Virus record (IMG/VR): IMGVR_UViG_3300046517_002304
Coordinates: 310,001-374,000 of that record
Strand: one strand, 5' to 3'
Length of the DNA stretch: 64,000 nt
Under the pieces are notes generated by a model. The model was given only the letters and a program-made list of their open reading frames with translations, ran no database searches and was not told the DNA's origin. Shown here piece by piece: positions 4,015 through 55,988 of the stretch. The position numbers were made by a program, and so were the translations under genes. Numbering within the stretch: the first letter of the stretch is position 1; each line of letters starts with the position of its first letter.

Positions 4015-4677
4015 TCATGCAAGCTCAGGATGGTTTTTGTATAGTTCATCCTTGATCTTGGCTAATTCCGTCATTGAAATTTCGTTTGGAAATCTTCCTA
4101 AGACATAACCATCGAAATAATACCGATACTCTGCCTTAGCTTTCATGCCATCGCTAAATACATAACATCCATTAGATTCAGGAAGCAGAACAGATGTTTC
4201 GGCCGGACCATCTGTTCTATGTCGGTTATCTTTATAATACCAACCCTCATGATACGTCCAACAAGAATTAGCAATGTAAGCAGGACCACCGACACGATGC
4301 CGTTGATTAAATTGATACCATTCTTTTGTCCCATTGGGATGGGTTATGGCAGGAAGATCATTATCTCTATGTAAGAGTCCATTTTGATACCACTCTTGAG
4401 TAATTTCATCTTTATATCTTGTAATAACTGCCGGTAAATCATTTTCACTATGCAATTCACCATTAGCATTGAACCACGACTCTTCAATCGCAGAACATCC
4501 CGCATCTTTTATAGTATGACACACATAACCATTTTTGGTTCCGATAACATCTTTTCCGTGTTTAAAATAAACAATTTTATCATCTATCCTTATATCTGCG
4601 AAAAGCTTCGGAAACGAAATCAGGCTTGCCGGAATTAAAGAAGACAATCCAGTGAGAATTTGACGACGATTAAGCAT
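4015..4677 (-). CDS. HRxDGPA-repeat protein with twin-arginine-like N-terminus
   Basis: MLNRRQIL...; LHSENDLPA, LHRDNDLPA, HRVGGPA, HRTDGPA repeats. Confidence 0.75.
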   Translation of the reverse strand: MLNRRQILTGLSSLIPASLISFPKLFADIRIDDKIVYFKHGKDVIGTKNGYVCHTIKDAGCSAIEESWFNANGELHSENDLPAVITRYKDEITQEWYQNGLLHRDNDLPAITHPNGTKEWYQFNQRHRVGGPAYIANSCWTYHEGWYYKDNRHRTDGPAETSVLLPESNGCYVFSDGMKAKAEYRYYFDGYVLGRFPNEISMTELAKIKDELYKNHPELA

Positions 4678-5582: not shown

Positions 5583-7260
5583 CTAATGAGTAAAAGGCCC
5601 ATGATCGTCATGCCAGTCTTGGTCAATTTGTTGCTGGCTTCTGTTATCGGATGCATAGCGCCTATCTGCATCGTCATCTTCTTTTTTATCTTTATCTGAC
5701 GCAGAAAGTTCTGCCGCCACTTCGCCAAAATCCTTGGCAAATACGCTATCGTCTGAAAGTGCCTTTAATTCTTCATTGGTAAGATCAAATTTCTTTGTTT
5801 TTTCGGCTGCACAATCGTCATCAAAAATATCTTTTTGTGCGGTATCTAACAAGTTATAATCAAACAGTCTGCGAAACATGCCCACCGTTTGGCCCGGCAT
5901 AAAAATTGATTTAACATCATGCTTGACTGCTGTTATCCAAGTGATATCATGGTCCCTTCCATCGGGCCTTAATAAAGCACCAACAGCAACAACATCTAAA
6001 GACGCAAAATTAAGATTATTGCCAGATAACAGCTTCTTAAGTTCTTCTCGGCTATTGGTAAGTTTGCCGATCCAGAAGTCGTAAAGCAATTCTCTGGCTT
6101 CGTCCAGCGTTATGACGAGGACCGATTGTTTAATTGCCATGATTAATATCTTTCCTCAAATTCGCCAAGTGTTCTTCGGCTTTTCCGACAAGGAAGCATC
6201 CTGTTTGGAAGTCCATATTTTTGAAATGCCATTCTTTCAAAATCTCTTAGCCTACTAACTGAACCAGGCGGGTCTAACCAACCCAATTCATTAATGGCTT
6301 GAATTTCTTTATTCATACGATCATTAAAAGCACTATCATAGCTACGCCATGGGCTATATGCTACGTCGGATGCTCTTTTGGCTATTCTTTCTTCATTATG
6401 CTTACTAAGCATTGCCATCAACGGACTGTTCTTAGGTAGCATCGGCCCGTCATTAAGCGGCGCAACTGTTTTATCGTCGTCGCCTAATCCATGAAATTCA
6501 TTATACTTATCAAAAGCATCTCTTTCTTCTGGACTAAGATTATCATAAAACCATAAAGAATGCAAGACTTCGTTATCGCTAGATGCACACCCATAGACTG
6601 CTCTGGCCCCATATTTAGCAGCTACTTCTATTCCAATTCCGATATCGGAATACATATTACACGCTTCGTCATAGCTCATACTAGGAAAATGAGGAATAGA
6701 ATCAATAGTTCCTTCGGCAATTAATTTTTTCAAATGACTAGGATCATTGACAAGAGCATCAAATTGCCAGTCTATTAAGGCAACTCTCATCTCATCAAGC
6801 GTCAGAACGACGATAGGAAAAACTTCAGGCATGATTATGTCACCCCAAAATTTAAATCAACTTCTCCCATACCCTTATTCGCAACTTCAGGTACAGTGGA
6901 CTCTTGTGCATTATTAAGTTGTATATCACCAAAAAGATGCTTAACCTTTTCTTGTTCTTCTTCGCTTAGATGCTTCCATTGCCATACCATTATCATCCCG
7001 CTTCCTGTCCCAATCTGACTAATATAAACCGCTCCAGCTTTATATTGAATTCCATATTTTTCTGCGAGATTGAGGTCTTCGTATTGATCGCAAACTTCTT
7101 TATGAGAAATACTATTAAAGTTACCAAGTCCAGCGATAGTCCCGTCTTTAAGAGATTCCTTGAGATAGTTTCTATCATTTAATAAAGTTTGAGTTCTCCA
7201 CTCAAGGAGTTCTTCCTTGGCTTCTTCAAATGACAGAATGACTATTGGGAAGGCTCTCAT
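5583..7260 (-). CDS. Three tandem paralogous hypothetical proteins (5583-6140, 6143-6832, 6835-7260)
   Basis: Shared N-terminus (V/I)x(I/L)(T/S)xxExxxxLxxW...LxN...LK. Confidence 0.65.
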
Positions 7261-9219
7261 GATGATTTATGGATAACTAATTTGGTATGGATAGCCAGTT
7301 ATTCCTTTGAGGAAATTCTTAGCTTCATTGCCTTGTTCGTATAACTCCGTGCCACTCGTACAAAAGCATCGTAGCGGCATATCTTTTAATTTTTTAAGAG
7401 TATTCATGTGTATAATTCTTACAAATACACAGCGAGACTGATCTTTTTCCAAGAGTTTAAGAACCCACTTGAATTCTTTTTCTACTTGCTTTTCTTTAGC
7501 GGTCATTTCGCAGCAAGCCTATTTTTGATTTCGTAGATAATATTTTCTGGAACCGAAACATATACATGCTGATCGCCCGAACGAAATGGGAAAGCAGCAA
7601 TTCTGTTTTTAAAATCAATATGGGCTATAAATAAATCTGGAGCTGTCAAATCATCTACCGAAATCGTAGCATCAAACTTAGGATGCTTTGATTTCTCAAA
7701 ATTCCAATGACGCTCTTCGGTCATATCGCCGATCTTGAACGCTTGTTCTGTAATCATATTATTCATCCTTATCCCAAACAACCCTATGTCCACCTTCATC
7801 GTCAATCATATAAACTAGTATAAGCTTATCACCAAACTGGGACTTTAATCTTATAATCGCATCAGAATCAGACGATGCACGAACGCAAGGAGGATGCTCA
7901 TCCCACTTGTTAAAAACCGCATAGTAATCAAACTCAGGCATCAAACACGACCGAATCGTTTTCGCCGATTGTCCATAATGTTGCTTTACTTAATAGCTTT
8001 TTAATAGCCGGAACCGGCACTGGCCATGCTCGCATGATTTTAATCATAGTCTTTTTGCCGCTTCCGAAATAGCCGGCAATGCAAAATTTCACAATGTTTG
8101 GAGTGTAGACCATTTCAGTTGATGCGAGTCGGTATGTCATAGTATTTCCTTATGGATAACTAAATCAAGATAGGTTACCTGGCATGCCCTGCACTTTATC
8201 TGCTAAATGGCGAATTGCCTTTTTAACGTCAGATAATTGCGCCATCGTATTATTACATGTTATACAACCTGCAAATTCATTAATTAATTTTACCACATCT
8301 TCTCTAAGAAGATAAACCCCTTCATCTATTGTGTCGGATTTCTTAATATCCAATATCTTCATGGGACAGTAAAACTAAAATCATTTTTCATTGCATGCTC
8401 GCAATATTTTTTGCCAAGGTTTGAACATCACACCGAACATCCGTTTCTTGAGTTGCAGCGAATTCTAATAACAAATCAATAACGTCCATTTCGCAAAGAT
8501 ACTTTCGCCTGCTACCGACTGGATCAAAGCCGTTATCTACCGATACGCCGACGCGCACGCCAACCGGAATTGTTATAGAGCGAACTTTAATCATAATTCA
8601 ATTCCACTTATACCACAAGCATTTCCCATAAATTCTACGTCTAAGCCTTCGCCGACCAATGCCAATATATGCGTGGTCATATTTAATGCGTTGTATCCAG
8701 TAGCGTTCGCCTCCTTGGCTCCATCACGAAAAATGAGATACTCATTGTTTCTTATCGTTACTATATCGTTAGCCCTACATTCAGAAATTTTCACTTCGGT
8801 TCTCCCGTTAAAATCCAGTCAATCTTAGCAGCAGAGATAGCAACTCGGAGTTGTGCTTCTAGCGCTGTGGCCGATGTTGTTTTTCTATTTTTTAAAGCAA
8901 AGACGATTGACAGCAACTCAGCAGCCGAAATATCGCCATCAATTTTAACTCTATATTCTTCACCTGGAATTGGCTTAAGAGTAATCATTGCCACCAACCT
9001 TTATCTTGCGGTTTTCTTCTACTTGCATTTGAACTGCATGATAGCAATTTTTTACGCTATCTTCTCTATCGCAGCCATTGACATGGATTACCGGATTAAT
9101 ATCAAGGCAAACTGCTTCCATGCCGCTAGATAACACTAAAATATGAATTATACTATTCTCAACAACAACATGAACTAAATCACTGTCGTTGTTTAAATCA
9201 ATAATTCTGTTACGAAGCA

Positions 9220-10325: not shown

Positions 10326-10661
10326 TTAAGAAATTCCACAAGCATTTAGAAGAAGTTTACGAAGCTCAATCATATTTGATTCGTGGTGTATACCAGATGA
10401 CATCCATTTATTATCGGCGGCATTTGCTATCGCAGATATTAGAACATCGGGAATACCTAATCTTTCACCAACGGACTGGTATGAGCTACATGGCCGATCT
10501 TTCAAGGCAGTTATCGGACAACAACTGCCTCCTTCTTGGAGCGAATTTCTAATAGGGGCCAATTCAGGAAAGGCTACGCCCCCCCATTTCAGGGACGACA
10601 CTCTGACATGCCAATTCCTTTTAGTCTTTCTTAAAGCGGCAATGAATTGTTTAAGATTCAT
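10326..10661 (-). CDS. MNLKQFIA paralogue family, copy 1
   Basis: MNLKQFIA...CPIT...AADN...ELRKLLLNACG. Confidence 0.7.
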   Translation of the reverse strand: MNLKQFIAALRKTKRNWHVRVSSLKWGGVAFPELAPIRNSLQEGGSCCPITALKDRPCSSYQSVGERLGIPDVLISAIANAADNKWMSSGIHHESNMIELRKLLLNACGIS

Positions 10662-11152
10662 ATCGCCGCTCCCGCATACATTGCCGCCGGATTTTTCAGG
10701 AAGTCTTTCATCCTAGCAACAACCATTTGTCTTGTAATAGGTCTTTTAGCATACATTCTTACGCCGAATAAATATTCAACGTCTTCATAGCTTAATTTTA
10801 AAATTTTTGCCAGTGTATACTTGGCTGTTTTCCACGTATCAGGATAAGGAAGATCAGTATTACGAGGCGAAGCGTTAATAGCTTCGTCAAAAGTCATACC
10901 GATTGGAATAACGAATGGCTGGCTCTGAGTAGGATGTGATTCATATTTACATAGATCAGGAAACGCTATAGGCAAATGTCCTCCAACGCACCCAGTTGTG
11001 CCACAACCTTCAGGATTTAACAAATCGCAAAAAGGATCATGTGTTCCACGGTAAGGAACACTCAGCACATAATTCATATCAAAGTGCTTGTCAAGAATTA
11101 TATTCTCAACAAAGCGAATGAGTTGTTTGAATCTGGTCTTATGCATTTTCAT
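10658..11152 (-). CDS. Hypothetical protein with CGTxxCxxGHLP motif (paralogue of 17688-18254)
   Basis: CGTTGCVGGHLPIAFP versus CGTQACAVGHLPLVFP. Confidence 0.65.
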   Translation of the reverse strand: MKMHKTRFKQLIRFVENIILDKHFDMNYVLSVPYRGTHDPFCDLLNPEGCGTTGCVGGHLPIAFPDLCKYESHPTQSQPFVIPIGMTFDEAINASPRNTDLPYPDTWKTAKYTLAKILKLSYEDVEYLFGVRMYAKRPITRQMVVARMKDFLKNPAAMYAGAAI

Positions 11153-11435
11153 TTACTCCACAGGCATCTAGTAAAAGTTTACGGAGTTCAAACATGTTGC
11201 TAGTATGATGACACTCCAATACCATATTGTCAGCAGCGTGAACAATCGCTGTGATTAATACGTTTGGCAATCCAACGGAAATGCCGACTTCATCAAATTG
11301 CTGGCAGTCCGCACCCTGTAGTGATGTAATCGGACAAGAAAAATTATCATCGTCTCTAAGAATACTTTTAACTTTAGAAACATGCCAATGCTTATTGGCA
11401 TTCTTAAGTTCGGCAATGAATTGTTTGAGGTTCAT
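11139..11435 (-). CDS. MNLKQFIA paralogue family, copy 2
   Basis: MNLKQFIA...CPIT...AADN...ELRKLLLDACG. Confidence 0.7.
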   Translation of the reverse strand: MNLKQFIAELKNANKHWHVSKVKSILRDDDNFSCPITSLQGADCQQFDEVGISVGLPNVLITAIVHAADNMVLECHHTSNMFELRKLLLDACGVNENA

Positions 11436-11445
11436 GATTTATTTC

Positions 11446-11862
11446 TTAGTTATCAAACCAGAAGACAATGCGAGAGTCTTCGTAGCCCATCTCCGCAAGG
11501 TCTTCCGCATCATCAGGATATTGCGGGTAATAGTCAATTCTATTTCCGAATAAGTAACCAAACAAAGGTGGATAATTTCGGTATTCTTTAAAGTTTTCGT
11601 ACCAATCTTCTATTTCCCCGGCTTCTTTAGATGACAGCCAAGAATGGTCGTGATAATCTATTGCTTTAAGATCGGCATCAAACTTAGTTGTAAAACTAAG
11701 GTCAGCAGGCAACCCCCTTGGAGGGGCAATGGGTTCCAGCTTTCCTCGTACTCCAGCCATTTTAGAAAATAGAGAATAACTCTGTTCAACACGAGGATGA
11801 TTATAATGGTGCCATGTTCCATTAACTTTAATCTCAACGTGAACGTGAATGTCGCAGCTCAT
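11446..11862 (-). CDS. Phage-type hypothetical protein
   Basis: MxCDIH...RGLPAD...HSWL...RIVFWFDN pattern familiar from phage proteins; motif 11 nt upstream. Confidence 0.6.
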   Translation of the reverse strand: MSCDIHVHVEIKVNGTWHHYNHPRVEQSYSLFSKMAGVRGKLEPIAPPRGLPADLSFTTKFDADLKAIDYHDHSWLSSKEAGEIEDWYENFKEYRNYPPLFGYLFGNRIDYYPQYPDDAEDLAEMGYEDSRIVFWFDN

Positions 11863-12165
11863 TGGCTATTTCCTATGGATAACTAAACCGTCTCCGACCC
11901 CTGTGCAACTATCGGCCTATGCATGTCCGTTTCTTACGCCTGCACACTATTAACATGCACACTTTTTACGGTTTAGCTTTGCTTATTGCTTCGCTTTCGC
12001 TATTAGCCATTCCAGTCCACTTTACGGAATAGCTCATGTCGCCAAGTTGTTTGCGGCAATAGCGGCAACGCGGGAATCTATTTTTGGGAACTGGAGAACG
12101 CCCCCAGTAGTAGGATGCGCAGTCGCAATTAACTCTCAGCACCCAATAATAGAATTTCTTCGTCA

Positions 12166-12354
12166 CTAGGACTTGATGGCTTTATTGACTTCGCTGACAG
12201 TCGTCTTGACTTCGTCTTCAACGCCGCTCAGTCCCTTCTTGAATTGGACAAAGCTGCTGCCGACGCTGCGGGCGATTCCTGGAAGCTTGTTCCCGAACAG
12301 AACTGTCCCGACCAAAAGCACCAGTCCGATTTCCATGTAAGAAATTCCGAAAAT
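12166..12354 (-). CDS. tatA: Twin-arginine translocase subunit TatA (missed by ORF track)
   Basis: (M)FGISYMEIGLVLLVGTVLFGNKLPGIARSVGSSFVQFKKGL...: single TM helix, FG hinge, KLP, amphipathic helix, FKKG. Start at ATT 12354 or ATG 12336. Confidence 0.85.
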   Translation of the reverse strand: MFGISYMEIGLVLLVGTVLFGNKLPGIARSVGSSFVQFKKGLSGVEDEVKTTVSEVNKAIKS

Positions 12355-12416
12355 GATTGCATCTCTCTTTCTTTATTGAGTGATTGAACGCGGGTTTTGT
12401 AATGTATTATGGATAA

Positions 12417-12950
12417 CTAAAGTTTTGAACCAGAAATCATAAACGCAATCGGTAAAGTAAATCTTTTTTTACCGATATCAAGTTTAATTTCCTCGCCTAA
12501 TAAACCATCAATCCATTTCTCATTAAATTGCTGTTCGCTGACAAAAGTGTTTATATCATTTCCCATATAAGAATTTATCACATGATAAAGATCATGGTCA
12601 ACTCCTACAAGATTCATTGCGTGTATACTTAGTTTGCCACACTTATTGCGCTTGGCCACATCACTTTGTTCCGCACCTAAAATAATACAAGTATAATTCT
12701 TAAGCAAATACTTTTTTAAGCTGGCGATTGTTTTTAAGCCATCAATCACAATTACATCATGTTCAATAAACATTGCATTAACAGCGCTATAAAGCTGGCG
12801 AAACTCACGGCTTTCAACTTGACCGCCCATTGCATTTTGGATGCGGTCTATATCTATCGATTTCTCCATACATGCCGCAGCATTATAAATTGCAGTAGGT
12901 ACGCATTCGTATTCTCTACAAGTAGAGCGAATTGTTATATCGGTTCGCAT
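12417..12950 (-). CDS. Putative papain-like (C39-like) cysteine peptidase
   Basis: ECVPTAIYNA (Cys at helix start), HAMNLVG, INS. Confidence 0.4.
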   Translation of the reverse strand: MRTDITIRSTCREYECVPTAIYNAAACMEKSIDIDRIQNAMGGQVESREFRQLYSAVNAMFIEHDVIVIDGLKTIASLKKYLLKNYTCIILGAEQSDVAKRNKCGKLSIHAMNLVGVDHDLYHVINSYMGNDINTFVSEQQFNEKWIDGLLGEEIKLDIGKKRFTLPIAFMISGSKL

Positions 12951-13189
12951 TTAATCTCGGCTTTTGAGATGGCAGCGAGAGTAGATTGCCGTTAGAATAT
13001 GAGTTACAAGATCATTTGGCCCGGCGGTTACAGGAACAAACTTAAGTTTAAATCCTTCTGTGCTTGCTGGCTTACCAGCTACACAGAAATCAAAGTTCCC
13101 GCGACGGCGCAGTTTGCCGAAGCTATCTCGCAACTCATAACGGCCAGTTTGGCCGAATCCCTTTGAATCAGTGGTGGGGAAGATAGCTG

Positions 13190-13756
13190 TCATGACTTAA
13201 AGAACTCAACCAGCGAAGCTTTAACGAATTCATCATTACTTACTTGAACTCCATTAATCCAATATTCTTCTGTACGAGTCCTGGAATCAGGGAGATATAT
13301 TTTTGCAGGTCCGTTAAGGCGATGAAGTTTCCCATTCTGCCACCATGCCGTAAGGCTTTTTGTTTCTACGGCAGGACCACCTATACGGTGAGGTCTTCCA
13401 TGCTGGTACCATTTTTTTTGGAGGATTTCTCCGTCAAGACTCTCTATAAAGGCAGGAGCGCCTGCACAATGCACGCTTCCCGTATCGTCGTAATGTGTTT
13501 CATGAATAAAATCACAGGAATTTCTTATTACTCGCTTCGGCTCACCATTTGAATAAAACCAAGCTTCTTTAAATCTAGTTTTTTTATAAACAACTAGCCC
13601 ATCACAGACCCCGTAAACATTGCCATTTAATTTCCCATACACAATTTCTTCCTTTTTAACTTCTGGTTCAGGGATAACTACCGCTTTAACTTCATTCTTG
13701 CCGAAGAATGAAAGCAAGCCAACGGGAAAAATGCTAAGGAAATTTCTACGCTGCAT
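13190..13756 (-). CDS. Tat-signal HRxDGPA-repeat protein
   Basis: Likely start MQRRNFLSIFPVGLLSFFGKNEVKA; HRIGGPA, LHRLNGPA. Confidence 0.75.
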   Translation of the reverse strand: MQRRNFLSIFPVGLLSFFGKNEVKAVVIPEPEVKKEEIVYGKLNGNVYGVCDGLVVYKKTRFKEAWFYSNGEPKRVIRNSCDFIHETHYDDTGSVHCAGAPAFIESLDGEILQKKWYQHGRPHRIGGPAVETKSLTAWWQNGKLHRLNGPAKIYLPDSRTRTEEYWINGVQVSNDEFVKASLVEFFKS

Positions 13757-14045
13757 TTTTGATTCCCTTAAGACCACAGGCGTCTAAAAGAAGATTGCGA
13801 AGTTCTCTAATGTTCGGATCGTGTTGGCAGTGATTATCGGCCGCTACGACGATTGCCTGTCGTAACTCTTCCGGTATTCCAAGTTTTATACTAATGATAT
13901 ACCAATCACTAAAAGGTTTGTTTTCTAACGATGAAATTGGGCAACAATACTCGTAGTCGCAAGTTCTAATTTTGTTTTCAATTAATGATAATTGCCACTT
14001 TTTATTAGTGGCCTTCAGGGCGGCGATAAATTGTTTGAGGTTCAT
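13746..14045 (-). CDS. MNLKQFIA paralogue family, copy 3
   Basis: Internal Met of ORF 13746..14084 matches the family start. Confidence 0.7.
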   Translation of the reverse strand: MNLKQFIAALKATNKKWQLSLIENKIRTCDYEYCCPISSLENKPFSDWYIISIKLGIPEELRQAIVVAADNHCQHDPNIRELRNLLLDACGLKGIKNAA

Positions 14046-14353
14046 GGTTTTTCGCGTCTCTGAAAATGACCGTTTAAATACCATTCTTTTGTACCGTTTG
14101 CTTGAATTACGGCAGGACCGCCTTTACGGTGAGGCTTACCATGCTTATACCATGCTTGCAAGCCGTCAGAGAAAATTATTGCTGGCCCATCTTCTCTGTG
14201 CAACTCTCCGTCTTCGTCAAACCAGCGTTGAACTCCGTCCTCGTCTACTGAATGAACGATTTTATTTTTTACTTGATGTTCGCTATCCTCAACCGGATGC
14301 TCAAAAGTAAATATCCGAACAGCAAGCAACAAAGAGAAAATGCTCGTTTGCAT
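14042..14353 (-). CDS. HRxDGPA-repeat protein without RR motif
   Basis: LHREDGPA, HRKGGPA; hydrophobic N-terminus. Confidence 0.7.
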   Translation of the reverse strand: MQTSIFSLLLAVRIFTFEHPVEDSEHQVKNKIVHSVDEDGVQRWFDEDGELHREDGPAIIFSDGLQAWYKHGKPHRKGGPAVIQANGTKEWYLNGHFQRREKP

Positions 14354-14380: not shown

Positions 14381-15124
14381 CTAAGTTCTCGGACCAAAGT
14401 CGTGAGGGCTGAACATATGCCCGCCTGGACCGTAATCCAAGAGCAGTTGTTCATTATATCGCCTGAGCTTTACCGCATATGCAAGCGGATCTCTAGTTCC
14501 AGTTGCCAATGGGATTCTGTGGTGAATTTTTATTTTTCCATCTTTATCATTATAAAAAATAATATCACCACTATCACACCTAATCTGCGGAATACTCTCA
14601 GCATATGCAATGCAAGGATTAACAGAATGCTCTGATACTGGAACAGCAGGAAGATTATGAACGGCATTCCACCATTCTTCCCGATCCATACATTGACCAT
14701 TTAAAGCATAATAGCAAGTTTTACCGCTCTTCTGAATAACGGCCGGTCCATCTTCTCTGTGTCTAGCCCCATGCTGATAGTAGTGATGGCTATGAGTGCC
14801 ATCAACACATTTAATTATCATGGCCGGATTGTTGTCTCTATGAATAAGTCCATTTTCATCATACCAGCATTCTATAAGCGCTCCCTTTTTATAACGAACA
14901 ATCCCATCCTTAATGCCGATAGTTTCTTTTTCCCCGACAGAGTAAAAAATTCCATCATGGAAGTAAGATGGACTGTCTGCCATGTCGTCGTTTGGATATG
15001 TTGGGATTGGCTCCTCAGTATAAGAATCATCAGGCGATTCTGAGACAGCCGCAACGATAGGCTTAATTAAGCCAACGCTGGCGAACATTGCGGGGATTGC
15101 AGCAAAGAAATTACGTCGCTTCAT
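14381..15124 (-). CDS. Tat-signal HRxDGPA-repeat protein
   Basis: MKRRNFFAAIPAMFASVG...; IHRDNNPA, HREDGPA. Confidence 0.75.
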   Translation of the reverse strand: MKRRNFFAAIPAMFASVGLIKPIVAAVSESPDDSYTEEPIPTYPNDDMADSPSYFHDGIFYSVGEKETIGIKDGIVRYKKGALIECWYDENGLIHRDNNPAMIIKCVDGTHSHHYYQHGARHREDGPAVIQKSGKTCYYALNGQCMDREEWWNAVHNLPAVPVSEHSVNPCIAYAESIPQIRCDSGDIIFYNDKDGKIKIHHRIPLATGTRDPLAYAVKLRRYNEQLLLDYGPGGHMFSPHDFGPRT

Positions 15125-31113: not shown

Positions 31114-31719
31114 CTAAGAGTGATATTTTTTAACATATATCGCGGCCTTAATATGTGCTCGCTGTAGTTCAGTTAATTGATGCTGCGTATCAAGAATGGC
31201 CTGTAAATGATCTATATCACAGTCCACCAATCGCTTCCATCGGAAGTGCTCTTTGCCGCTCTTTCCGTAGGTTCCCCACAATTTAAACCCATTTTCATCT
31301 ACGTAAAATCCATCTACAACACGAAAAGGTTGCGCGGAATCATCTTCCTCTATTTCTTTAACTGGCGACTCTATTTTCACGCTAAGATGTTCAGGAAGTT
31401 CTGGAAACTTAATTGGTTGCCAGCAAATAACCGATCCATCTGGAAACGAACCCCATGACGACGAACGCCAGTGCATATTTTCATAACGTCCTTTACGAAC
31501 ATATGGTAAGTCTACATTTTCCGTATTGTGTTTAACAACTATAAAGCACTCTTCTTTATTGTCTGGCAATTCATCCTTGCAATAAATCCAGTCATCATTG
31601 CTAATTTCTGGAATATCCACTTTTACTTTAGGAGTATCGGCATTATTAGCCTTGCAGCCCCCAATAAATGGAAGCAGACCAGCCAACGGAAGCGATGATA
31701 GAAAATTTCTGCGTTTCAT
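31114..31719 (-). CDS. Tat-signal lipoprotein-like protein with DUF551-like domain
   Basis: MKRRNFLSSLPLAGLLPFIGG-C; WIYCKDELP...VICWQPI. Confidence 0.6.
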   Translation of the reverse strand: MKRRNFLSSLPLAGLLPFIGGCKANNADTPKVKVDIPEISNDDWIYCKDELPDNKEECFIVVKHNTENVDLPYVRKGRYENMHWRSSSWGSFPDGSVICWQPIKFPELPEHLSVKIESPVKEIEEDDSAQPFRVVDGFYVDENGFKLWGTYGKSGKEHFRWKRLVDCDIDHLQAILDTQHQLTELQRAHIKAAIYVKKYHS

Positions 31720-47575: not shown

Positions 47576-47974
47576 CTAAGAATGATGAAGGTTGTTAAAT
47601 TCTTCTTCGGTAATGTGCCTTGTAACTGGATAGGCGTTTACGTAAAGTGGTTGCCCAAGAAAATTTTGGTAGTAAGATTTATACCCTATGCCATTATAAT
47701 ACCATCGTTGAACACCGCCACACGCAGAAGAATAAATAGCAGGCAAATCATCATCACAATGAATTTGGCCTTCTTTGTTAAAATAAGTCTTTTCCACCGA
47801 GCATTTTTGCCAAACTACAATTCCATCACGAACGCAATAAGTCATTTCCCCTCTTTTAAACTTAATAAACTTAGATTTCTTGGCAAGAATCTCTGGCTTA
47901 CTTTCCGCCTTTGCAAATGGCAAGAAAGAAAGCAATCCAGCAGGAATGAATGCAAGGAAATTACGTCGCAGCAT
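47576..47974 (-). CDS. Tat-signal HRxDGPA-family protein (single repeat)
   Basis: MLRRNFLAFIPAGLLSFLPFAKA-E; IHCDDDLPA. Confidence 0.7.
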   Translation of the reverse strand: MLRRNFLAFIPAGLLSFLPFAKAESKPEILAKKSKFIKFKRGEMTYCVRDGIVVWQKCSVEKTYFNKEGQIHCDDDLPAIYSSACGGVQRWYYNGIGYKSYYQNFLGQPLYVNAYPVTRHITEEEFNNLHHS

Positions 47975-48041: not shown

Positions 48042-48116
48042 TGGCTGTGGTCAGATTTGAACTGACGATCTCAAGGTTATGGGCCTCGCGGGGACTCCAG
48101 GCTCCCCCACACAGCG
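48042..48116 (-). tRNA. tRNA-Met(CAT), initiator-like, CCA not encoded
   Basis: Acceptor CGCTGTG/CACAGCC (1:72 mismatch), D arm GGGG/CCCC, anticodon arm CGAGG-CCCATAA-CCTTG, T arm GTCAG-TTCAAAT-CTGAC. Confidence 0.9.
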
Positions 48117-49862: not shown

Positions 49863-50465
49863 TTAAACAAAACCTCGCGCCTTGCACGGTGCAATCAATT
49901 CGCGAAATGATTCAAGATCACACACAAAAAACCTATGACCTTTATAAAACCACTGTGTAAACGCCGGAAACTTATCGTCTTCTATTGCAGGCCCATCTTC
50001 ACGATGTCTGTTGCCATTGAAATACCATTCTCTTACTCCACATGGGTCAACAATCGCTGGCCCATCTTCACGATGACATATGCCATTTTTGAGCCACTCT
50101 TTCCTGCCGTCAGAATGAATAACGGCCGGGCCATTATCTCGGTGGCACACTCCATTTTTAAACCATGAACAATAACCGTCACGCCTCATTATTGCAGGCA
50201 AATCACCGTCTCTGTGAATTTGTCCTTTTTTATTATAAAAAGTAATTTCGCCCCTAACGGTGCTTTCTATGGTCTTATAAACCACTCCATCTACCGCACA
50301 TAAAATTAAATCGCCAAGCATAACTGAATCTGGAATAGCAGAAACAGCATCAAGCGCAACATTCATTTCGCCAAATTCAACGTGAGCATCTTCTGCCTTA
50401 ACCTTAAAAGACAGCATGCCAATCAACGCCGAGGGTATAAAGGAAAGTAGAGTTCTTCTCTTCAT
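49863..50465 (-). CDS. Tat-signal HRxDGPA-repeat protein
   Basis: MKRRTLLSFIPSALIGMLSFKVKA-E; four repeats. Confidence 0.75.
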   Translation of the reverse strand: MKRRTLLSFIPSALIGMLSFKVKAEDAHVEFGEMNVALDAVSAIPDSVMLGDLILCAVDGVVYKTIESTVRGEITFYNKKGQIHRDGDLPAIMRRDGYCSWFKNGVCHRDNGPAVIHSDGRKEWLKNGICHREDGPAIVDPCGVREWYFNGNRHREDGPAIEDDKFPAFTQWFYKGHRFFVCDLESFRELIAPCKARGFV

Positions 50466-50892: not shown

Positions 50893-51519
50893 TTACTTAA
50901 CATCTTGCAAATAACGCTGAGTTTCAGCATCAATTCTTCCTTGTCTTGGAGTATTATCTTTATGATCCCATAACCATTTATGAGCAGGAATTCTAAAATC
51001 ATACTGTTCTTCATTTATTCCATATCCATAAAGATACCATGCCCGCCAGCCGGTTGTTGGGCTTGTAATGGCCGGGCCATCTTCACGATGACGCTCGCCG
51101 TTCTGATACCAAAATTCATCGCCACAGCTATAATAATGAGCGGGTCCACCATCACGATGCCTCTCGCCATTTTTATACCACACAAACTCGCCCCATCCAA
51201 ATTCAATAGCCGGACCATCTTCCCTGTGTCGTATTCCGTTAATAAACCATTCTTTGCTACCTTGCCAACCCTCTACCGCCGGACCATCATTTCTGTGAAG
51301 TTCTCCGGAAGAATTATAGTAACGCTTTGTACCGTAACGGTCAGTGCGACAACCACTCCCCCATCCAGGTGGTATTTCAGAATGAGTTAATTTAATAACG
51401 AAATTATCCGCCTTAGTAATTGATTCCGGCGCAACTTCAGTTGCTTTAGTTTCTTTCACAGAGAAGAAACCGGCAAACAGGCCAGCAGGAATTAATCCAA
51501 GGAAATTTCTACGCTTCAT
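50893..51519 (-). CDS. Tat-signal HRxDGPA-repeat protein
   Basis: MKRRNFLGLIPAGLFAGFFSVKETKA-T; four repeats. Confidence 0.75.
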   Translation of the reverse strand: MKRRNFLGLIPAGLFAGFFSVKETKATEVAPESITKADNFVIKLTHSEIPPGWGSGCRTDRYGTKRYYNSSGELHRNDGPAVEGWQGSKEWFINGIRHREDGPAIEFGWGEFVWYKNGERHRDGGPAHYYSCGDEFWYQNGERHREDGPAITSPTTGWRAWYLYGYGINEEQYDFRIPAHKWLWDHKDNTPRQGRIDAETQRYLQDVK

Positions 51520-54219: not shown

Positions 54220-55041
54220 TCAAACCTTATGCACTTTATTTTCGTATAGGTAGTATACAGGAACTGGGAACTTCTGTCTAGACAGAAATTGATGAATTTC
54301 GTCCAAAGCATACCTGATTGAAATATGGTACAGGAACAAAGCATCAATCCTTTTATTTTTAATAACTTCCATTACACCATCAAAAGACGAATGAACATCG
54401 TATTTGATATCGTTTTTGTTTAAAAACGTACATTCATGGCAGAAAATACCACCGTCATACTCACCGTACTTGTCCAACGGAACCGTATCGCCTGAATACG
54501 TAAGCAATCCATGCTTGTAATCATTCGTAATCGGCGTTCCAGACTGCTTAAGTCTAATGATTTCGTCTACAGGAGCACAGCTATATTCTTCCTTTAACTT
54601 TCTGCGAACCTCGAATAACTGAAATCCAAGCGTAAGCGCGCCTTCAATATGCCTGCCTGGGAAACAATATACATATAGGTTTCTTCCTACTTCAACAACC
54701 TGATGTGCATCTACGGCAATCCACTCAATCTGGAATTGCGTATTATTGATTTCCTGCTCAAGATAAACCTTCATCTTAATAACACCCAAACTGCCCTTGG
54801 GATAAATAATTCTAAGAGGCTTATTGTTGTGGCCCTTACCAAATTCTCTTGCGTGAAAGAAACTTGGAAGACCAGATATATGATCTAAGTGACCATGAGA
54901 CAGCAGAATCGTTTCAACAGCGAAAATGCGTTCTTTAAGATTAAATGCGCACCCTTCGCCGCAATCAAAGAGGATACGGCTTGGCTGATGAAAAAGCCAC
55001 GTAGCATAGCCAGCCAATGAGCAACCTTCAAGATTCAGCAT
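54220..55041 (-). CDS. rnz: RNase Z-like metallo-beta-lactamase fold hydrolase
   Basis: FDCGEG, SHGHLDH, YSGDT, HECTF, HSS, HISIRY. Confidence 0.8.
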   Translation of the reverse strand: MLNLEGCSLAGYATWLFHQPSRILFDCGEGCAFNLKERIFAVETILLSHGHLDHISGLPSFFHAREFGKGHNNKPLRIIYPKGSLGVIKMKVYLEQEINNTQFQIEWIAVDAHQVVEVGRNLYVYCFPGRHIEGALTLGFQLFEVRRKLKEEYSCAPVDEIIRLKQSGTPITNDYKHGLLTYSGDTVPLDKYGEYDGGIFCHECTFLNKNDIKYDVHSSFDGVMEVIKNKRIDALFLYHISIRYALDEIHQFLSRQKFPVPVYYLYENKVHKV

Positions 55042-55988
55042 TTGTTTTTATGGATAACTATTTTGTTAGTTTTTAAATCCATGCTCATTAAGGATGTGCA
55101 TGGACCAACTATTTTCACTTTAGGATTATATACAATGCCTTTGCATTGTGTATATAAAAGCTTATCGTTCTCCCAATATTCCTTAACACCATTACTCCAC
55201 TCTACTGCCGGACCACCCACTCTATGCTGCAATCCATGTTTATGCCATGCCTTATATCCGCCCCTCATAATTACGGCAGGGCCGTCTTCTCGGTGTAAAT
55301 TACCATGAAAATACCATTCTTTCGTTCCATTGGTGTATTCGCAAGCCGGACCGGCTGCTCTATGTGGTTTATTATTAAAATACCAAATATTAGTTCCGTT
55401 TTCTTCCTCAATCGCCGGACCATCCTCACGATGAAGCATTCCGAGCTGCATCCACCTTTTTTGTCCGGATGCATATATTATGGCTGGACCTCCTATCCGA
55501 TGACACTGCCCATGATTCATCCAAGTAGTAGAAGATGGATTGATACGAGCAGGCCCATCTTCCCGATGGTATCTGCCATCTTCATCAAACCAAGACTCTT
55601 CATCATAATGTCCGCTTAACTTAAAATACCTTTTCTTTCCATTTATAAAACCGATTTTAATATCTTGACGACTTGAATCAGAATATTCTACATACTCCAT
55701 ATATTCTTTTTGTTCAGGCAATCCAAGCTTCTCTACATTAATGCCGCAAGTATAGATGAAATTTATAAGTTTATTTCTAAAGAAAGCCGAATCCTTAATA
55801 TCAAACTGTTCTTCGGCAGATTTCATAAACTCTTCATCGCACTCCTGTTTTTGAGTAAAAGCATAAACATTCTTAATATAAGAAATATAAAGCTTATCCT
55901 TCTTCGTGAAAGATTCCTTATCCACTCCTGTAGAAAGGAATGAAAGAAAGCCGGTCGGCAACAGTGAGAGGAAACTTCTTCGTAGCAT
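55035..55988 (-). CDS. Tat-signal HRxDGPA-repeat protein (six repeats)
   Basis: Likely start MLRRSFLSLLPTGFLSFL; HREDGPA/HRIGGPA/HRAAGPA/HRVGGPA. Confidence 0.75.
   Translation of the reverse strand: MLRRSFLSLLPTGFLSFLSTGVDKESFTKKDKLYISYIKNVYAFTQKQECDEEFMKSAEEQFDIKDSAFFRNKLINFIYTCGINVEKLGLPEQKEYMEYVEYSDSSRQDIKIGFINGKKRYFKLSGHYDEESWFDEDGRYHREDGPARINPSSTTWMNHGQCHRIGGPAIIYASGQKRWMQLGMLHREDGPAIEEENGTNIWYFNNKPHRAAGPACEYTNGTKEWYFHGNLHREDGPAVIMRGGYKAWHKHGLQHRVGGPAVEWSNGVKEYWENDKLLYTQCKGIVYNPKVKIVGPCTSLMSMDLKTNKIVIHKNKC

What the first reader, a model, noticed from the sequence alone, without database searches (positions are those of the whole stretch)
12166..12354. Hidden tatA gene, possibly starting at a non-canonical ATT codon
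Seen: the TatA-like frame has an in-frame TAA shortly upstream. The family's usual MFG start aligns with ATT-TTC-GGA in the context GCAATC-ATT, matching the ATC-ATG context of many starts here (e.g. 15792). The first ATG (12336) would lose the FG-x-S-x-x-E N-terminus. Established: AUU starts are rare and IF3-sensitive (infC). Inference: deliberately low expression, or a point mutation or sequencing error. The FGNKLP..ARS.G pattern reminds me of Planctomycetota TatA, a weak host hint.
Basis: partly seen in the sequence, partly recalled or inferred. Interest (0 to 1): 0.65.

Follow-up and report, generated by a model that had tools for sequence, protein, structure and literature searches.

The report
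Phage-borne tatA starting at ATT
A 511-kb soil phage carries its own TatA (the pore-forming subunit of the bacterial machine that exports folded proteins) plus about ten proteins with Tat export signals; where relatives have the ATG start codon this gene has a real ATT, so it is made either weakly at full length or six residues shorter.

Summary
On the minus strand, 12354-12166 is a TatA-family frame (Pfam PF02416, 38.6 bits, cut-off 21). An in-frame TAA lies at 12375-12373 and no ATG/GTG/TTG occurs before 12336. The ATT at 12354 sits in the column where 10 of 17 aligned relatives have their initiator Met. Its upstream context scores in the top 11% of this genome's inferred starts; that of ATG 12336 looks like an internal ATG. 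ATT is not an error: eight assemblies (the window, four JGI assemblies, three further runs) are identical there. Because they are identical, nothing shows which start is used.

New context: the window is part of a complete 511,233-bp tailed phage. tatA is compositionally foreign (GC3 0.65 against 0.37). Its closest relatives are TatAs on other viral contigs, then Planctomycetota (Phycisphaerae). The phage has no TatC but encodes about ten proteins with canonical twin-arginine signal peptides, eight of them in this window. It also encodes an IF3 and an initiator-like tRNA.

Best reading: the phage supplies TatA to the host TatC so that its own Tat cargo is exported. Whether AUU is used is unresolved (about 0.45). 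The gene is not hidden: gene callers already call the 56-aa ATG form.

The parts
12166..12354 (-). tatA frame read from ATT: 62 codons plus TAG (a TGA follows immediately). Transmembrane helix about residues 6-20, F20-G21 hinge, amphipathic helix from residue 24 with the F-K-K-G motif.
12352..12354 (-). ATT codon at the position where the family has its initiator Met; preceded by ATC, the commonest -3..-1 context of starts in this genome.
12334..12336 (-). First in-frame ATG (residue 7), directly before the conserved Glu. This is the start used by public gene calls (56 aa); its upstream context is weak.
12373..12375 (-). In-frame TAA that closes the frame upstream. No canonical start lies between it and ATT.
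12363..12374 (-). Purine tract AAAGAAAGAGAG, the likely ribosome-binding region. It ends 8 nt before ATT and resembles the native start cassettes of this phage (purine tract, then ATC, then ATG).
12228..12362 (-). Out-of-frame ATG (12362-12360) opening a 44-codon overlapping frame. Context score 2.84 bits. It is a possible competitor for ribosomes, or the ancestral start if the T run 12353-12350 lost one T.
   Evidence: reading of the sequence
12407..12420 (-). Copy of the recurrent phage motif TTAGTTATCCATAA (9-mer core at 12417-12409), overlapping the stop of the upstream 177-aa gene and ending 54 nt before ATT. Likely a promoter or leader element.
   Evidence: 97 copies of the core against about 6 expected
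13190..13756 (-). Tat-signal protein (N-terminus MQRRNFLS followed by a hydrophobic stretch) of the beta-hairpin repeat family, 1 kb upstream of tatA.
14381..15124 (-). Tat-signal protein (MKRRNFF...).
4015..4677 (-). Tat-signal protein (MLNRRQIL...).
31114..31719 (-). Tat-signal protein (MKRRNFLS...) whose hydrophobic stretch ends in a lipobox-like IGGC.
47576..47974 (-). Tat-signal protein (MLRRNFLA..., with AKA before the likely cleavage site).
49863..50465 (-). Tat-signal protein (MKRRTLLS...). The mature part is a MORN_2/YwqK-like repeat fold by Atlas structure match.
50893..51519 (-). Tat-signal protein (MKRRNFLG...).
55035..55988 (-). Tat-signal protein (MLRRSFLS...), the largest member of the repeat family in the window.

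Best explanation
This is a genuine TatA-family gene carried by a complete 511-kb tailed phage from soil and rhizosphere. It was taken up horizontally from a more GC-rich source (a Planctomycetota-type host or another phage). It now sits behind a copy of the phage's recurrent upstream motif and a native-style purine-tract/ATC start cassette. The phage has no TatC. The inferred mechanism is that phage TatA inserts into the host membrane and is recruited by the host TatC receptor as extra pore-forming subunit. That would raise Tat capacity for the roughly ten phage proteins with canonical twin-arginine signal peptides, eight of which are encoded around tatA. At the codon where both the family and the cassette place ATG, the genome has a real, fixed ATT, most simply explained by a G-to-T change. 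My preferred reading is that initiation at this AUU gives the full 62-aa protein at reduced, IF3-sensitive yield, possibly alongside some initiation at AUG 12336. My estimates for each step: real TatA in a phage, 0.95; ATT marks the ancestral or designed start, 0.85; helper role for phage Tat cargo, 0.6; AUU actually used, 0.45. The overall confidence given is for the whole picture, with the start codon left as the weakest link.
For: Family: Pfam PF02416 at 38.6 bits against a cut-off of 21. Sequence match to solved chloroplast TatA 7b7o, starting at query residue 1. The AlphaFold model (pLDDT 83) shows helix 6-20, a hinge, then helix 24-61. E8, F20, G21, P25 and F38-K-K-G41 are invariant in 18 aligned sequences.

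Phage: the record has direct terminal repeats and 100% estimated completeness, a terminase and a tail sheath, and reads under code 11.

Foreign origin: GC3 is 0.645 against a genome mean of 0.365; only 0.6% of equal-sized windows reach that value. The best cellular matches are Phycisphaerales and other Planctomycetota. The S-[FV]-V-Q-F-K-K signature was seen only in viral loci.

Start position: the Met of 10 of 17 relatives aligns on ATT. Context scores are 4.96 bits for ATT and -0.86 for ATG 12336. ATC precedes 10.8% of starts. In 52 of 73 family rows no canonical start lies nearer than 5 residues before the conserved Glu, and a Met directly before that Glu also occurs as an internal residue in relatives that start at MFNLGW....

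ATT is real. No ATG variant was found by the word search.

Cargo: 10 of 734 predicted proteins have Tat-type N-termini against 0 of 1563 internal-Met controls. RR[NSTQ]F[LF] occurs six times at N-termini and nowhere else in 140,934 residues. No TatC in the phage. Two other tatA-bearing viral records also encode canonical RR-signal proteins and lack TatC.

AUU can work: inside an optimised initiation region, AUU mRNA gave 0.48-0.74 of the AUG yield in vitro and was the start most reduced by added IF3 (PMC5499595).
Against: No experiment or expression data exist; no RNA run holds the locus. All eight assemblies are identical, so there is no evidence of selection on ATT or on codons 2-6. ATT codons in good context are no commoner upstream of other genes than any other codon (8 of 490 = 1.6%, the same as overall), so this phage shows no habit of ATT starts. 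The phage's own IF3 should lower AUU initiation. An out-of-frame ATG 8 nt upstream with a decent context (2.84 bits) could capture ribosomes. TatA is normally needed in excess, so a weak start fits a 'booster' role poorly. The protein scores below NCBIfam's TatA/E cut-off (37.4 against 53.9). The Tat signals were called by my own rule set; no HMM for them fired. The host is unknown.
Confidence: 0.5

Rival explanations
1. Translation starts at AUG 12336, as the public gene calls have it, giving a 56-aa TatA without the six-residue N-tail. The ATT is then only the scar of a lost start. The shortened protein may still work, because it keeps the polar Glu, a 12-residue hydrophobic core, the FG hinge and the amphipathic helix.
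For: It is the only canonical in-frame start. The 56-aa form still passes Pfam at 36 bits. About 12% of inferred true starts in this genome have contexts as poor or poorer. All residues invariant in the alignment lie downstream of Met7. The extra phage IF3 would favour AUG over AUU.
Against: The context looks like an internal ATG (-0.86 bits, 60th percentile of internal ATGs) and the purine tract lies about 26 nt upstream. No relative needs to start there: 52 of 73 family rows have no start nearer than 5 residues before the Glu, and every relative with Met at that position has an upstream start and a conserved N-tail. The model puts Met7 inside the transmembrane helix.
Confidence: 0.3
2. The gene has lost its start and is silent or decaying. 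This could be through ATG to ATT, or through loss of one T from a former T5 run (12353-12350), which would have put ATG 12362 in frame. A recently captured passenger gene that this clonal phage population does not need.
For: No canonical start lies at the family position. Restoring a fifth T would give an in-frame ATG start followed by Q-S-F-F-G-I-S-Y-M-E, also a plausible TatA N-terminus (my reading; relatives with short N-terminal extensions appear). The composition is foreign, so the capture is recent. There is no population diversity with which to show purifying selection.
Against: The 62-codon frame is intact and every family-invariant residue is kept. The gene sits behind the phage's own upstream motif and a native-style start cassette. 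The phage encodes about ten Tat cargo proteins that give the gene a purpose. For the deletion variant specifically, the context of ATG 12362 is weaker (2.84 against 4.96 bits), and it would be chance that the codon left at the family Met column is one change from ATG.
Confidence: 0.2
3. ATT is a sequencing or assembly error for ATG.
For: None beyond the rarity of ATT starts.
Against: Four further JGI assemblies from different samples are 100% identical over 301 nt. Logan contigs of three further runs (X3 11039-13019, X4 12158-12413, X5 12212-12394) cover the codon with no differing letter. No 62-aa ATG-start variant was found among 5.8 billion clustered proteins by the word search.
Confidence: 0.02
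4. The TatA-like protein is used not for export but to weaken the membrane at lysis, as a holin-like helper next to a wall-degrading enzyme.
For: It is a small protein with one transmembrane helix and an amphipathic helix. Membrane thinning by TatA oligomers is established knowledge of the family. The upstream 177-aa gene has a Cys-containing motif reminiscent of papain-like peptidases (my reading, untested).
Against: No lysis enzyme is identified nearby: Pfam and PHROGs found nothing for the neighbours. All Tat-specific residues are conserved. The co-encoded RR-signal cargo gives a direct use for export.
Confidence: 0.05

Closest known systems
TatA/TatE family (Pfam PF02416 mttA/Hcf106; E. 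coli TatA, B. subtilis TatAd, chloroplast Tha4/TatA, PDB 7b7o and 2lzr)
   Same: Length, short N-tail, polar residue at position 8, about 12 hydrophobic residues, F-G hinge, L-P, amphipathic helix with F-K-K-G.
   Different: Encoded by a phage with no TatC in the genome. No canonical start codon at the family start. Below the NCBIfam TatA/E cut-off. Carries Glu rather than the Gln of E. coli TatA at position 8, like its Planctomycetota relatives.
TatA of Planctomycetota (Phycisphaerae and others), minimal TatA + TatC systems
   Same: These are the best cellular matches (42-59% identity) and share G-N/K-R-L-P and K-G-L-x-G-V-E-D-E. Four of five genomes checked have a single TatA-family gene, unlinked to a single tatC.
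   Different: The cellular proteins read G-K-G-I-V-E-F-K-K where the window and two viral lineages read G-S-S-F-V-Q-F-K-K. That signature was found only in viral loci. The cellular proteins also have longer C-tails.
TatA genes on other viral contigs (P0002 group L007-L012; IMG/VR contigs behind L094, L095/L002 and L096)
   Same: Short TatAs of 57-77 aa, 42-63% identical to the window's. They lie on virus-classified or virus-like contigs without TatC, and two of those records also encode canonical RR-signal proteins.
   Different: They start with ATG (GTG in one case), and three of them (L007, L094, L095; L096 was not measured) match the GC3 of their own genomes. The window's copy is compositionally foreign and has ATT.
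Bacterial genes that initiate at AUU (E. coli infC and pcnB; established knowledge; PMC5499595)
   Same: ATT in a good initiation region, with an in-frame stop upstream and no canonical alternative at the conserved N-terminus. AUU is the start most sensitive to IF3.
   Different: In infC the AUU is conserved across species and its autoregulatory role has been shown. Here there is a single clonal sequence and no expression data. The phage's own IF3 gene appears to start at TTG, not ATT.
Host-machinery and translation genes carried by huge phages (auxiliary genes; translation factors and tRNAs in huge phages, e.g. the bS21 phages of PMC9723584, title seen)
   Same: A large phage carrying a single subunit of a host machine, alongside an IF3 and tRNAs.
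   Different: I found no report of a phage-encoded Tat translocase subunit, no match in 50,697 deposited phage genomes and no PHROG family.

Membership tests
TatA/TatE (Pfam PF02416, TIGR01411) | Significant match to the family profile above the curated cut-off | tested here: met
   Pfam PF02416: 38.6 bits against a cut-off of 21, E 6.1e-10; confirmed by a six-frame search of the genome.
TatA/TatE (Pfam PF02416, TIGR01411) | Passes NCBIfam's TatA/E subfamily cut-off (TIGR01411) | tested here: not met
   37.4 bits against a cut-off of 53.9. It is still the best NCBIfam model, ahead of TatB at 25.3 bits. So it belongs to the broad TatA_B_E family and is TatA-like, but diverges from the curated subfamily.
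TatA/TatE (Pfam PF02416, TIGR01411) | Architecture: short N-tail, one short transmembrane helix, F-G hinge, amphipathic helix | tested here: met
   AlphaFold model at pLDDT 83: helix 6-20, break 21-23, helix 24-61. F20, G21, P25 and F38-K39-K40-G41 are invariant in 18 sequences. The only Foldseek PDB row is TatA 2lzr, but at E 1.7, which is not significant.
TatA/TatE (Pfam PF02416, TIGR01411) | Conserved polar residue at the N-terminal end of the helix (position 8) | tested here: met
   Glu8 in the window; Glu in 70 of 73 family rows.
TatA/TatE (Pfam PF02416, TIGR01411) | Works with a TatC receptor encoded by the same genome | tested here: not met
   No TatC (PF00902) in the 511-kb phage at E <= 0.1. 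It would have to use the host's TatC, and the host is unknown.
TatA/TatE (Pfam PF02416, TIGR01411) | Supports export of twin-arginine substrates | not testable with these tools
   Needs complementation of a tatA/tatE-deficient strain or work in the natural host.
Genes with a functional AUU start (infC type) | Homology to the family N-terminus continues upstream of the first canonical start and ends at the ATT | tested here: met
   I-F-G-I-S-Y aligns with M-F-G-[LIM]-[GP]-x. The Met of 10 of 17 relatives falls in the ATT column. The PDB TatA alignment begins at query residue 1.
Genes with a functional AUU start (infC type) | Initiation-type context in front of the ATT; upstream in-frame stop; no canonical alternative | tested here: met
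   4.96 bits, 89th percentile of true starts. TAA lies 6 codons upstream. ATC at -3..-1.
Genes with a functional AUU start (infC type) | ATT conserved in diverged orthologues | tested here: inconclusive
   All eight copies are identical. No diverged orthologue was found. More distant viral TatAs use ATG or GTG.
Genes with a functional AUU start (infC type) | Initiation at AUU observed (protein N-terminus, ribosome profiling, reporter) | not testable with these tools
   No RNA run holds the locus; no proteomics available.
Twin-arginine (Tat) signal peptides on the phage's repeat proteins | N-terminal R-R-x-F-L-type motif followed by an uncharged hydrophobic stretch | tested here: met
   10 of 734 predicted proteins pass, against 0 of 1563 internal-Met windows. 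The strict motif occurs 6 times at N-termini and 0 times elsewhere in 140,934 residues.
Twin-arginine (Tat) signal peptides on the phage's repeat proteins | Recognition by a curated Tat-signal model | tested here: inconclusive
   No Pfam or NCBIfam Tat-signal model was reported. Such short models rarely pass HMMER's filters. No TatP- or SignalP-type predictor was available.

The most novel reading that the evidence does not exclude
The phage runs its own Tat export programme and times it through start-codon choice. It brings the translocon subunit (tatA), about ten folded-protein cargoes with twin-arginine signals, an IF3 and an initiator-like tRNA with only two G-C pairs in the anticodon stem. 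The AUU start would make tatA output depend on the IF3 and initiator-tRNA state that the phage itself sets during infection. This would be an infC-like logic reused by a virus for a membrane machine.
Probability: 0.1. Interest if true: 0.8.

Novelty: new variant of a known kind. Interest (0 to 1): 0.55.

Why it matters
Tat is regarded as a purely cellular (and plastid) export system. A virus that carries the limiting pore subunit together with a set of its own Tat-targeted proteins would show that phages can reprogramme folded-protein export, probably to decorate or remodel the host envelope during a long megaphage infection. That opens a tractable question: what the exported repeat proteins do. 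The ATT codon is a clean natural test case for non-canonical initiation in a phage that also encodes IF3 and an initiator-like tRNA. For annotation, gene callers truncate this TatA by six conserved residues, and the same may happen to other captured genes.

Tried and rejected
- Another genetic code: recoding any stop codon does not lengthen the longest frames, so code 11 was kept.
- Sequencing error: rejected.
- Programmed frameshift or transcriptional slippage from ATG 12362 into the TatA frame: a -1 shift is needed, there is no X XXY YYZ heptamer, and the T run is only 4 long (reading). Rejected as unlikely.
- Genome-wide habit of ATT/ATC/ATA/CTG starts: not seen.
- RNA structure around the two candidate starts: not different from shuffles, z = +1.1.
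- Sigma-70 promoter and terminator scans: at chance level.
- Relatives of the neighbouring 177-aa gene, sought in order to find a sister phage: none in IMG/VR.
- Homology of the 300 nt downstream of tatA to the flanks of other tatA loci: none.
- RR-signal genes within 6 kb of the other viral tatAs: none convincing, though they do occur elsewhere on two of those records.
- Deposited phage genomes and PHROGs: no TatA.
- Literature: no report of a phage-encoded TatA. Most 'tata' hits were TATA boxes or species names.
- HK97 capsid and Terminase_6C profiles found nothing, but Terminase_6N and tail sheath did.
- Foldseek against the PDB gave only a non-significant TatA row.
- Not run: the large representative-protein search (the protein was not left open) and complex prediction (the host TatC is unknown).
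- Read laying was given 4,001 letters.

Full report
**1. What is at the coordinates**

Read on the minus strand, the window has TAA at 12375-12373, followed by six codons without ATG, GTG or TTG. Then come ATT (12354-12352) TTC GGA ATT TCT TAC, ATG (12336-12334), and 55 further codons to TAG TGA. The 62-residue reading from ATT matches Pfam TatA_B_E (PF02416) at 38.6 bits, E 6.1e-10, against a cut-off of 21, over profile positions 1-50. The 56-residue reading from ATG scores 36.0 bits and starts at profile position 5. NCBIfam ranks TatA/E first (37.4 bits) ahead of TatB (25.3 bits), but below the curated 53.9-bit cut-off. The sequence also matches the solved chloroplast TatA 7b7o from query residue 1 (E 3.4e-4). 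An AlphaFold model built on 18 aligned sequences (pLDDT 83) has a helix at 6-20, a three-residue break, and a helix at 24-61. The only Foldseek PDB row is TatA 2lzr, and it is not significant. E8, F20, G21, P25 and F38-K-K-G41 are invariant in the alignment. The gene is not hidden, however: the public gene call (56 aa, from ATG) already carries the Pfam label.

**2. What genome this is**

The window is bases 310001-374000 of a 511,233-bp virus record with direct terminal repeats and 100% estimated completeness. The genome has 39% GC and reads normally under code 11. It encodes a large terminase (Terminase_6N, 44.7 bits) and a contractile tail sheath (35.2 bits). It occurs in soil and rhizosphere metagenomes. 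It has one TatA-family gene and no TatC.

**3. Is the ATT real?**

Yes. Four other JGI assemblies from different samples are identical to the window over 301 nt around the gene. Contigs of three further public runs span the codon with no differing letter: X3 11039-13019, X4 12158-12413, X5 12212-12394. These are contigs at low depth, so rare variants could be missed. The word search of 5.8 billion protein clusters found only the window's own 56-aa call and one 57-aa relative, and no 62-aa ATG-start variant. The drawback is that all copies are identical, so they say nothing about selection.

**4. Is ATT at a start position?**

Two independent lines say yes.

*Homology.* In an alignment with 17 viral and cellular TatAs, the initiator Met of 10 falls in the ATT column (M-F-G-L/I/M...). 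The window reads I-F-G-I-S-Y-M-E. Across 73 family rows the Glu is present in 70. In 52 rows no canonical start codon lies closer than five residues before it. A Met directly before the Glu also occurs as an internal residue in relatives that clearly start upstream. So Met7 is a family-typical internal residue and the N-tail is a conserved part of the protein.

*Initiation context.* I inferred 734 starts in the phage genome and built a 20-nt position-weight matrix from them. It shows G/A enrichment at -12 to -7, A at -3 and C at -1.
- The sequence before ATT scores 4.96 bits, the 89th percentile of inferred starts and above 99.3% of internal ATGs.
- The sequence before ATG 12336 scores -0.86, the 12th percentile of starts and the 60th of internal ATGs.
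- Native start cassettes in this part of the genome read as a purine tract, then a few bases, then ATC, then ATG. tatA has the purine tract, then ATGCA, ATC, ATT.

**5. What cannot be decided**

The same evidence is expected whether AUU is used today or an ATG was recently lost.
- ATT, ATC, ATA and CTG codons in good context are not enriched upstream of other genes (ATT 8 of 490 = 1.6%, equal to the overall rate), so the phage has no general habit of such starts.
- Local RNA folding is unremarkable, and generic promoter and terminator scans are at chance level.
- An out-of-frame ATG at 12362 shares the purine tract and scores 2.84 bits. It could draw ribosomes into a 44-codon overlapping frame.
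- It also allows a second origin. If the T4 run at 12353-12350 was once T5, ATG 12362 would have been in frame, again giving a plausible TatA N-terminus. I rate the G-to-T substitution as more likely. The ATT site has the better context, and the codon left in the family's Met column is one change from ATG, which would be coincidence under the deletion.
- Published in-vitro work shows that AUU inside an optimised initiation region can give 0.48-0.74 of the AUG yield. It is also the start most reduced by added IF3 (PMC5499595). So a productive AUU is plausible, and it would be IF3-sensitive.

My estimates: AUU used, alone or together with AUG 12336, about 0.45; AUG 12336 only, about 0.3; essentially silent, about 0.2.

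**6. Origin of the gene**

tatA has GC3 of 0.645 against a genome mean of 0.365 (99th percentile of genes; 0.6% of equal-sized in-frame windows). Its first nine codons are AT-rich. It is therefore a fairly recent capture.

The closest proteins are TatAs on other viral or virus-like contigs:
- P0002, about 60% identical (59-63% depending on the alignment), on 36% GC contigs with ThyX and nucleotide-sugar genes.
- Three IMG/VR contigs.

The closest cellular matches in a scan of 185,579 species genomes are overwhelmingly Planctomycetota, mainly Phycisphaerales, at 42-59% identity. That scan was seeded by two peptide patterns and so is biased towards proteins that share them. The stretch S-[FV]-V-Q-F-K-K occurs only in viral loci among everything fetched, which hints at a phage-circulating TatA lineage; this rests on few sequences. 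Five Planctomycetota genomes each have one tatC and, in four cases, a single unlinked TatA-family gene. That is a minimal TatAC arrangement, into which one extra TatA could fit.

**7. Why a phage would carry it**

A scan of the phage proteome for N-terminal R-R-x-[hydrophobic]-[hydrophobic] followed by at least 13 uncharged, mostly hydrophobic residues found 10 of 734 proteins, against 0 of 1563 control windows starting at internal Met. The strict motif RR[NSTQ]F[LF] occurs six times at N-termini and nowhere else in 140,934 residues.

After removing two weak calls and adding one member just outside the window, there are about ten clear cases. Eight lie in this window: 4015-4677, 13190-13756, 14381-15124, 31114-31719, 47576-47974, 49863-50465, 50893-51519 and 55035-55988, all on the minus strand. 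They begin M-[KLQ]-R-R-[NST]-[FL]-[LF]. Several have A-x-A-like sites and one has a lipobox-like end.

Most belong to one paralogous repeat family that also has members without the signal. The Atlas model of one resembles viral repeat proteins and MORN_2/YwqK-like folds at TM 0.56-0.63.

Two of the three other tatA-bearing IMG/VR records, fetched whole, also encode canonical RR-signal proteins, and none has TatC.

The inference, not shown, is that phage TatA joins the host TatC receptor and raises Tat capacity for phage cargo. A membrane-weakening or lysis role is a weaker alternative.

**8. Regulatory surroundings**

A copy of the phage's recurrent element (core GTTATCCAT; 97 copies against about 6 expected) lies at 12417-12409, ending 54 nt before ATT. 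All copies fall between genome positions 260 and 409 kb. Nearly all are on the coding strand, usually 8-12 or 25-41 nt before a start. This suggests tatA is wired into the phage's own expression programme.

The phage also encodes an IF3 (IF3_C 61.5 bits). That gene has no ATG before its conserved N-domain and probably starts at a TTG behind AAGGAA. It also encodes a tRNA-Met(CAT) with an unpaired 1:72 position, an initiator hallmark, and only two G-C pairs next to the anticodon loop. Both bear on start-codon selection, but I did not test any link to tatA.

**9. Known or new**

I found no report of a phage-encoded Tat subunit in the searchable literature. There was no match in 50,697 deposited phage genomes and no PHROG family. 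The protein itself is an ordinary, if divergent, TatA. What is new is the carrier, the co-encoded cargo set and the ATT at the start position. I file it as a new variant of a known kind.

**10. Limits**

- Start inference and the Tat-signal rule are my own scripts.
- The genome-contig scan was pattern-seeded.
- Run data were contigs only.
- The host is unknown.
- The large representative-protein search and complex prediction were not used.

Noticed in passing
window 12409-12417 and about 60 other places in the window's minus strand; genome positions 260-409 kb: The 9-mer GTTATCCAT (usually tTAGTTATCCATA) occurs 97 times in the phage against about 6 expected. Nearly all copies are on the coding strand, typically 8-12 or 25-41 nt before a start codon. 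It is probably a phage-specific promoter or leader element marking one large block of genes.
   Followed up: partly
genome G000:C1:470401-470655 (-), locus L093 1438-2088: The phage encodes an IF3 homologue (IF3_C 61.5 bits). There is no ATG upstream of its conserved N-domain. The likely start is a TTG behind AAGGAA, which would give an N-tail the same length as in E. coli IF3.
   Followed up: partly
window 48042-48116 (-): tRNA-Met(CAT) with a mismatched 1:72 pair (C opposite C) and A73, as in bacterial initiator tRNA, but with only two G-C pairs next to the anticodon loop. The genome has three more tRNAs: Met, Arg(TCT) and Leu(TAA).
   Followed up: partly
window 4015-4677, 13190-13756, 14381-15124, 31114-31719, 47576-47974, 49863-50465, 50893-51519, 55035-55988; genome 144542-145006 and 377147-377962: About ten proteins with canonical twin-arginine signal peptides. 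Most are paralogues of a beta-hairpin repeat family (MORN_2/YwqK-like by structure) that also has signal-less members at genome 74978-77848 and 251306-252139.
   Followed up: partly
window 10326-10661, 11139-11435, 13746-14084 (-): Three paralogous small proteins (98-112 aa), two beginning MNLKQFIA and the third carrying that motif from residue 14, with a shared C-terminal ...ELRKLLLDACG motif, interleaved with the Tat-related genes. No Pfam or PHROG match for the one tested, 11139-11435.
   Followed up: no
window 11966-12166 (-): A 66-codon Cys-rich frame (C-x-C ... C-x-x-C) starts at a GTG overlapping the tatA stop, in the 300-nt stretch that gene callers leave empty. GC is raised here as in tatA. 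No family match, no paralogue, and no likeness to the flanks of other tatA loci.
   Followed up: partly
loci L097-L108 (IMG/VR records G006, 101 kb, and G007, 107 kb): Other tatA-bearing viral records encode proteins starting MKRRSFLKS..., MRRRAFLKS... (G006 6842-7579 and 11091-11561) and ...TRRSFLQT... (G007 95609-96610), and they lack TatC. The pairing of tatA with Tat cargo may be a recurrent phage trait.
   Followed up: partly
window 11446-11862 (-): The 138-aa gene downstream of tatA matches phrog_10141 (unknown function, E 2.8e-19). It is the only neighbour with any phage-family hit.
   Followed up: no
window 12642-12677: In all four runs laid, a short contig of an unrelated GC-rich sequence matches this 36-nt stretch with 6 differences and runs on unlike the window on both sides. 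This is probably a chance match at the 80% threshold.
   Followed up: no
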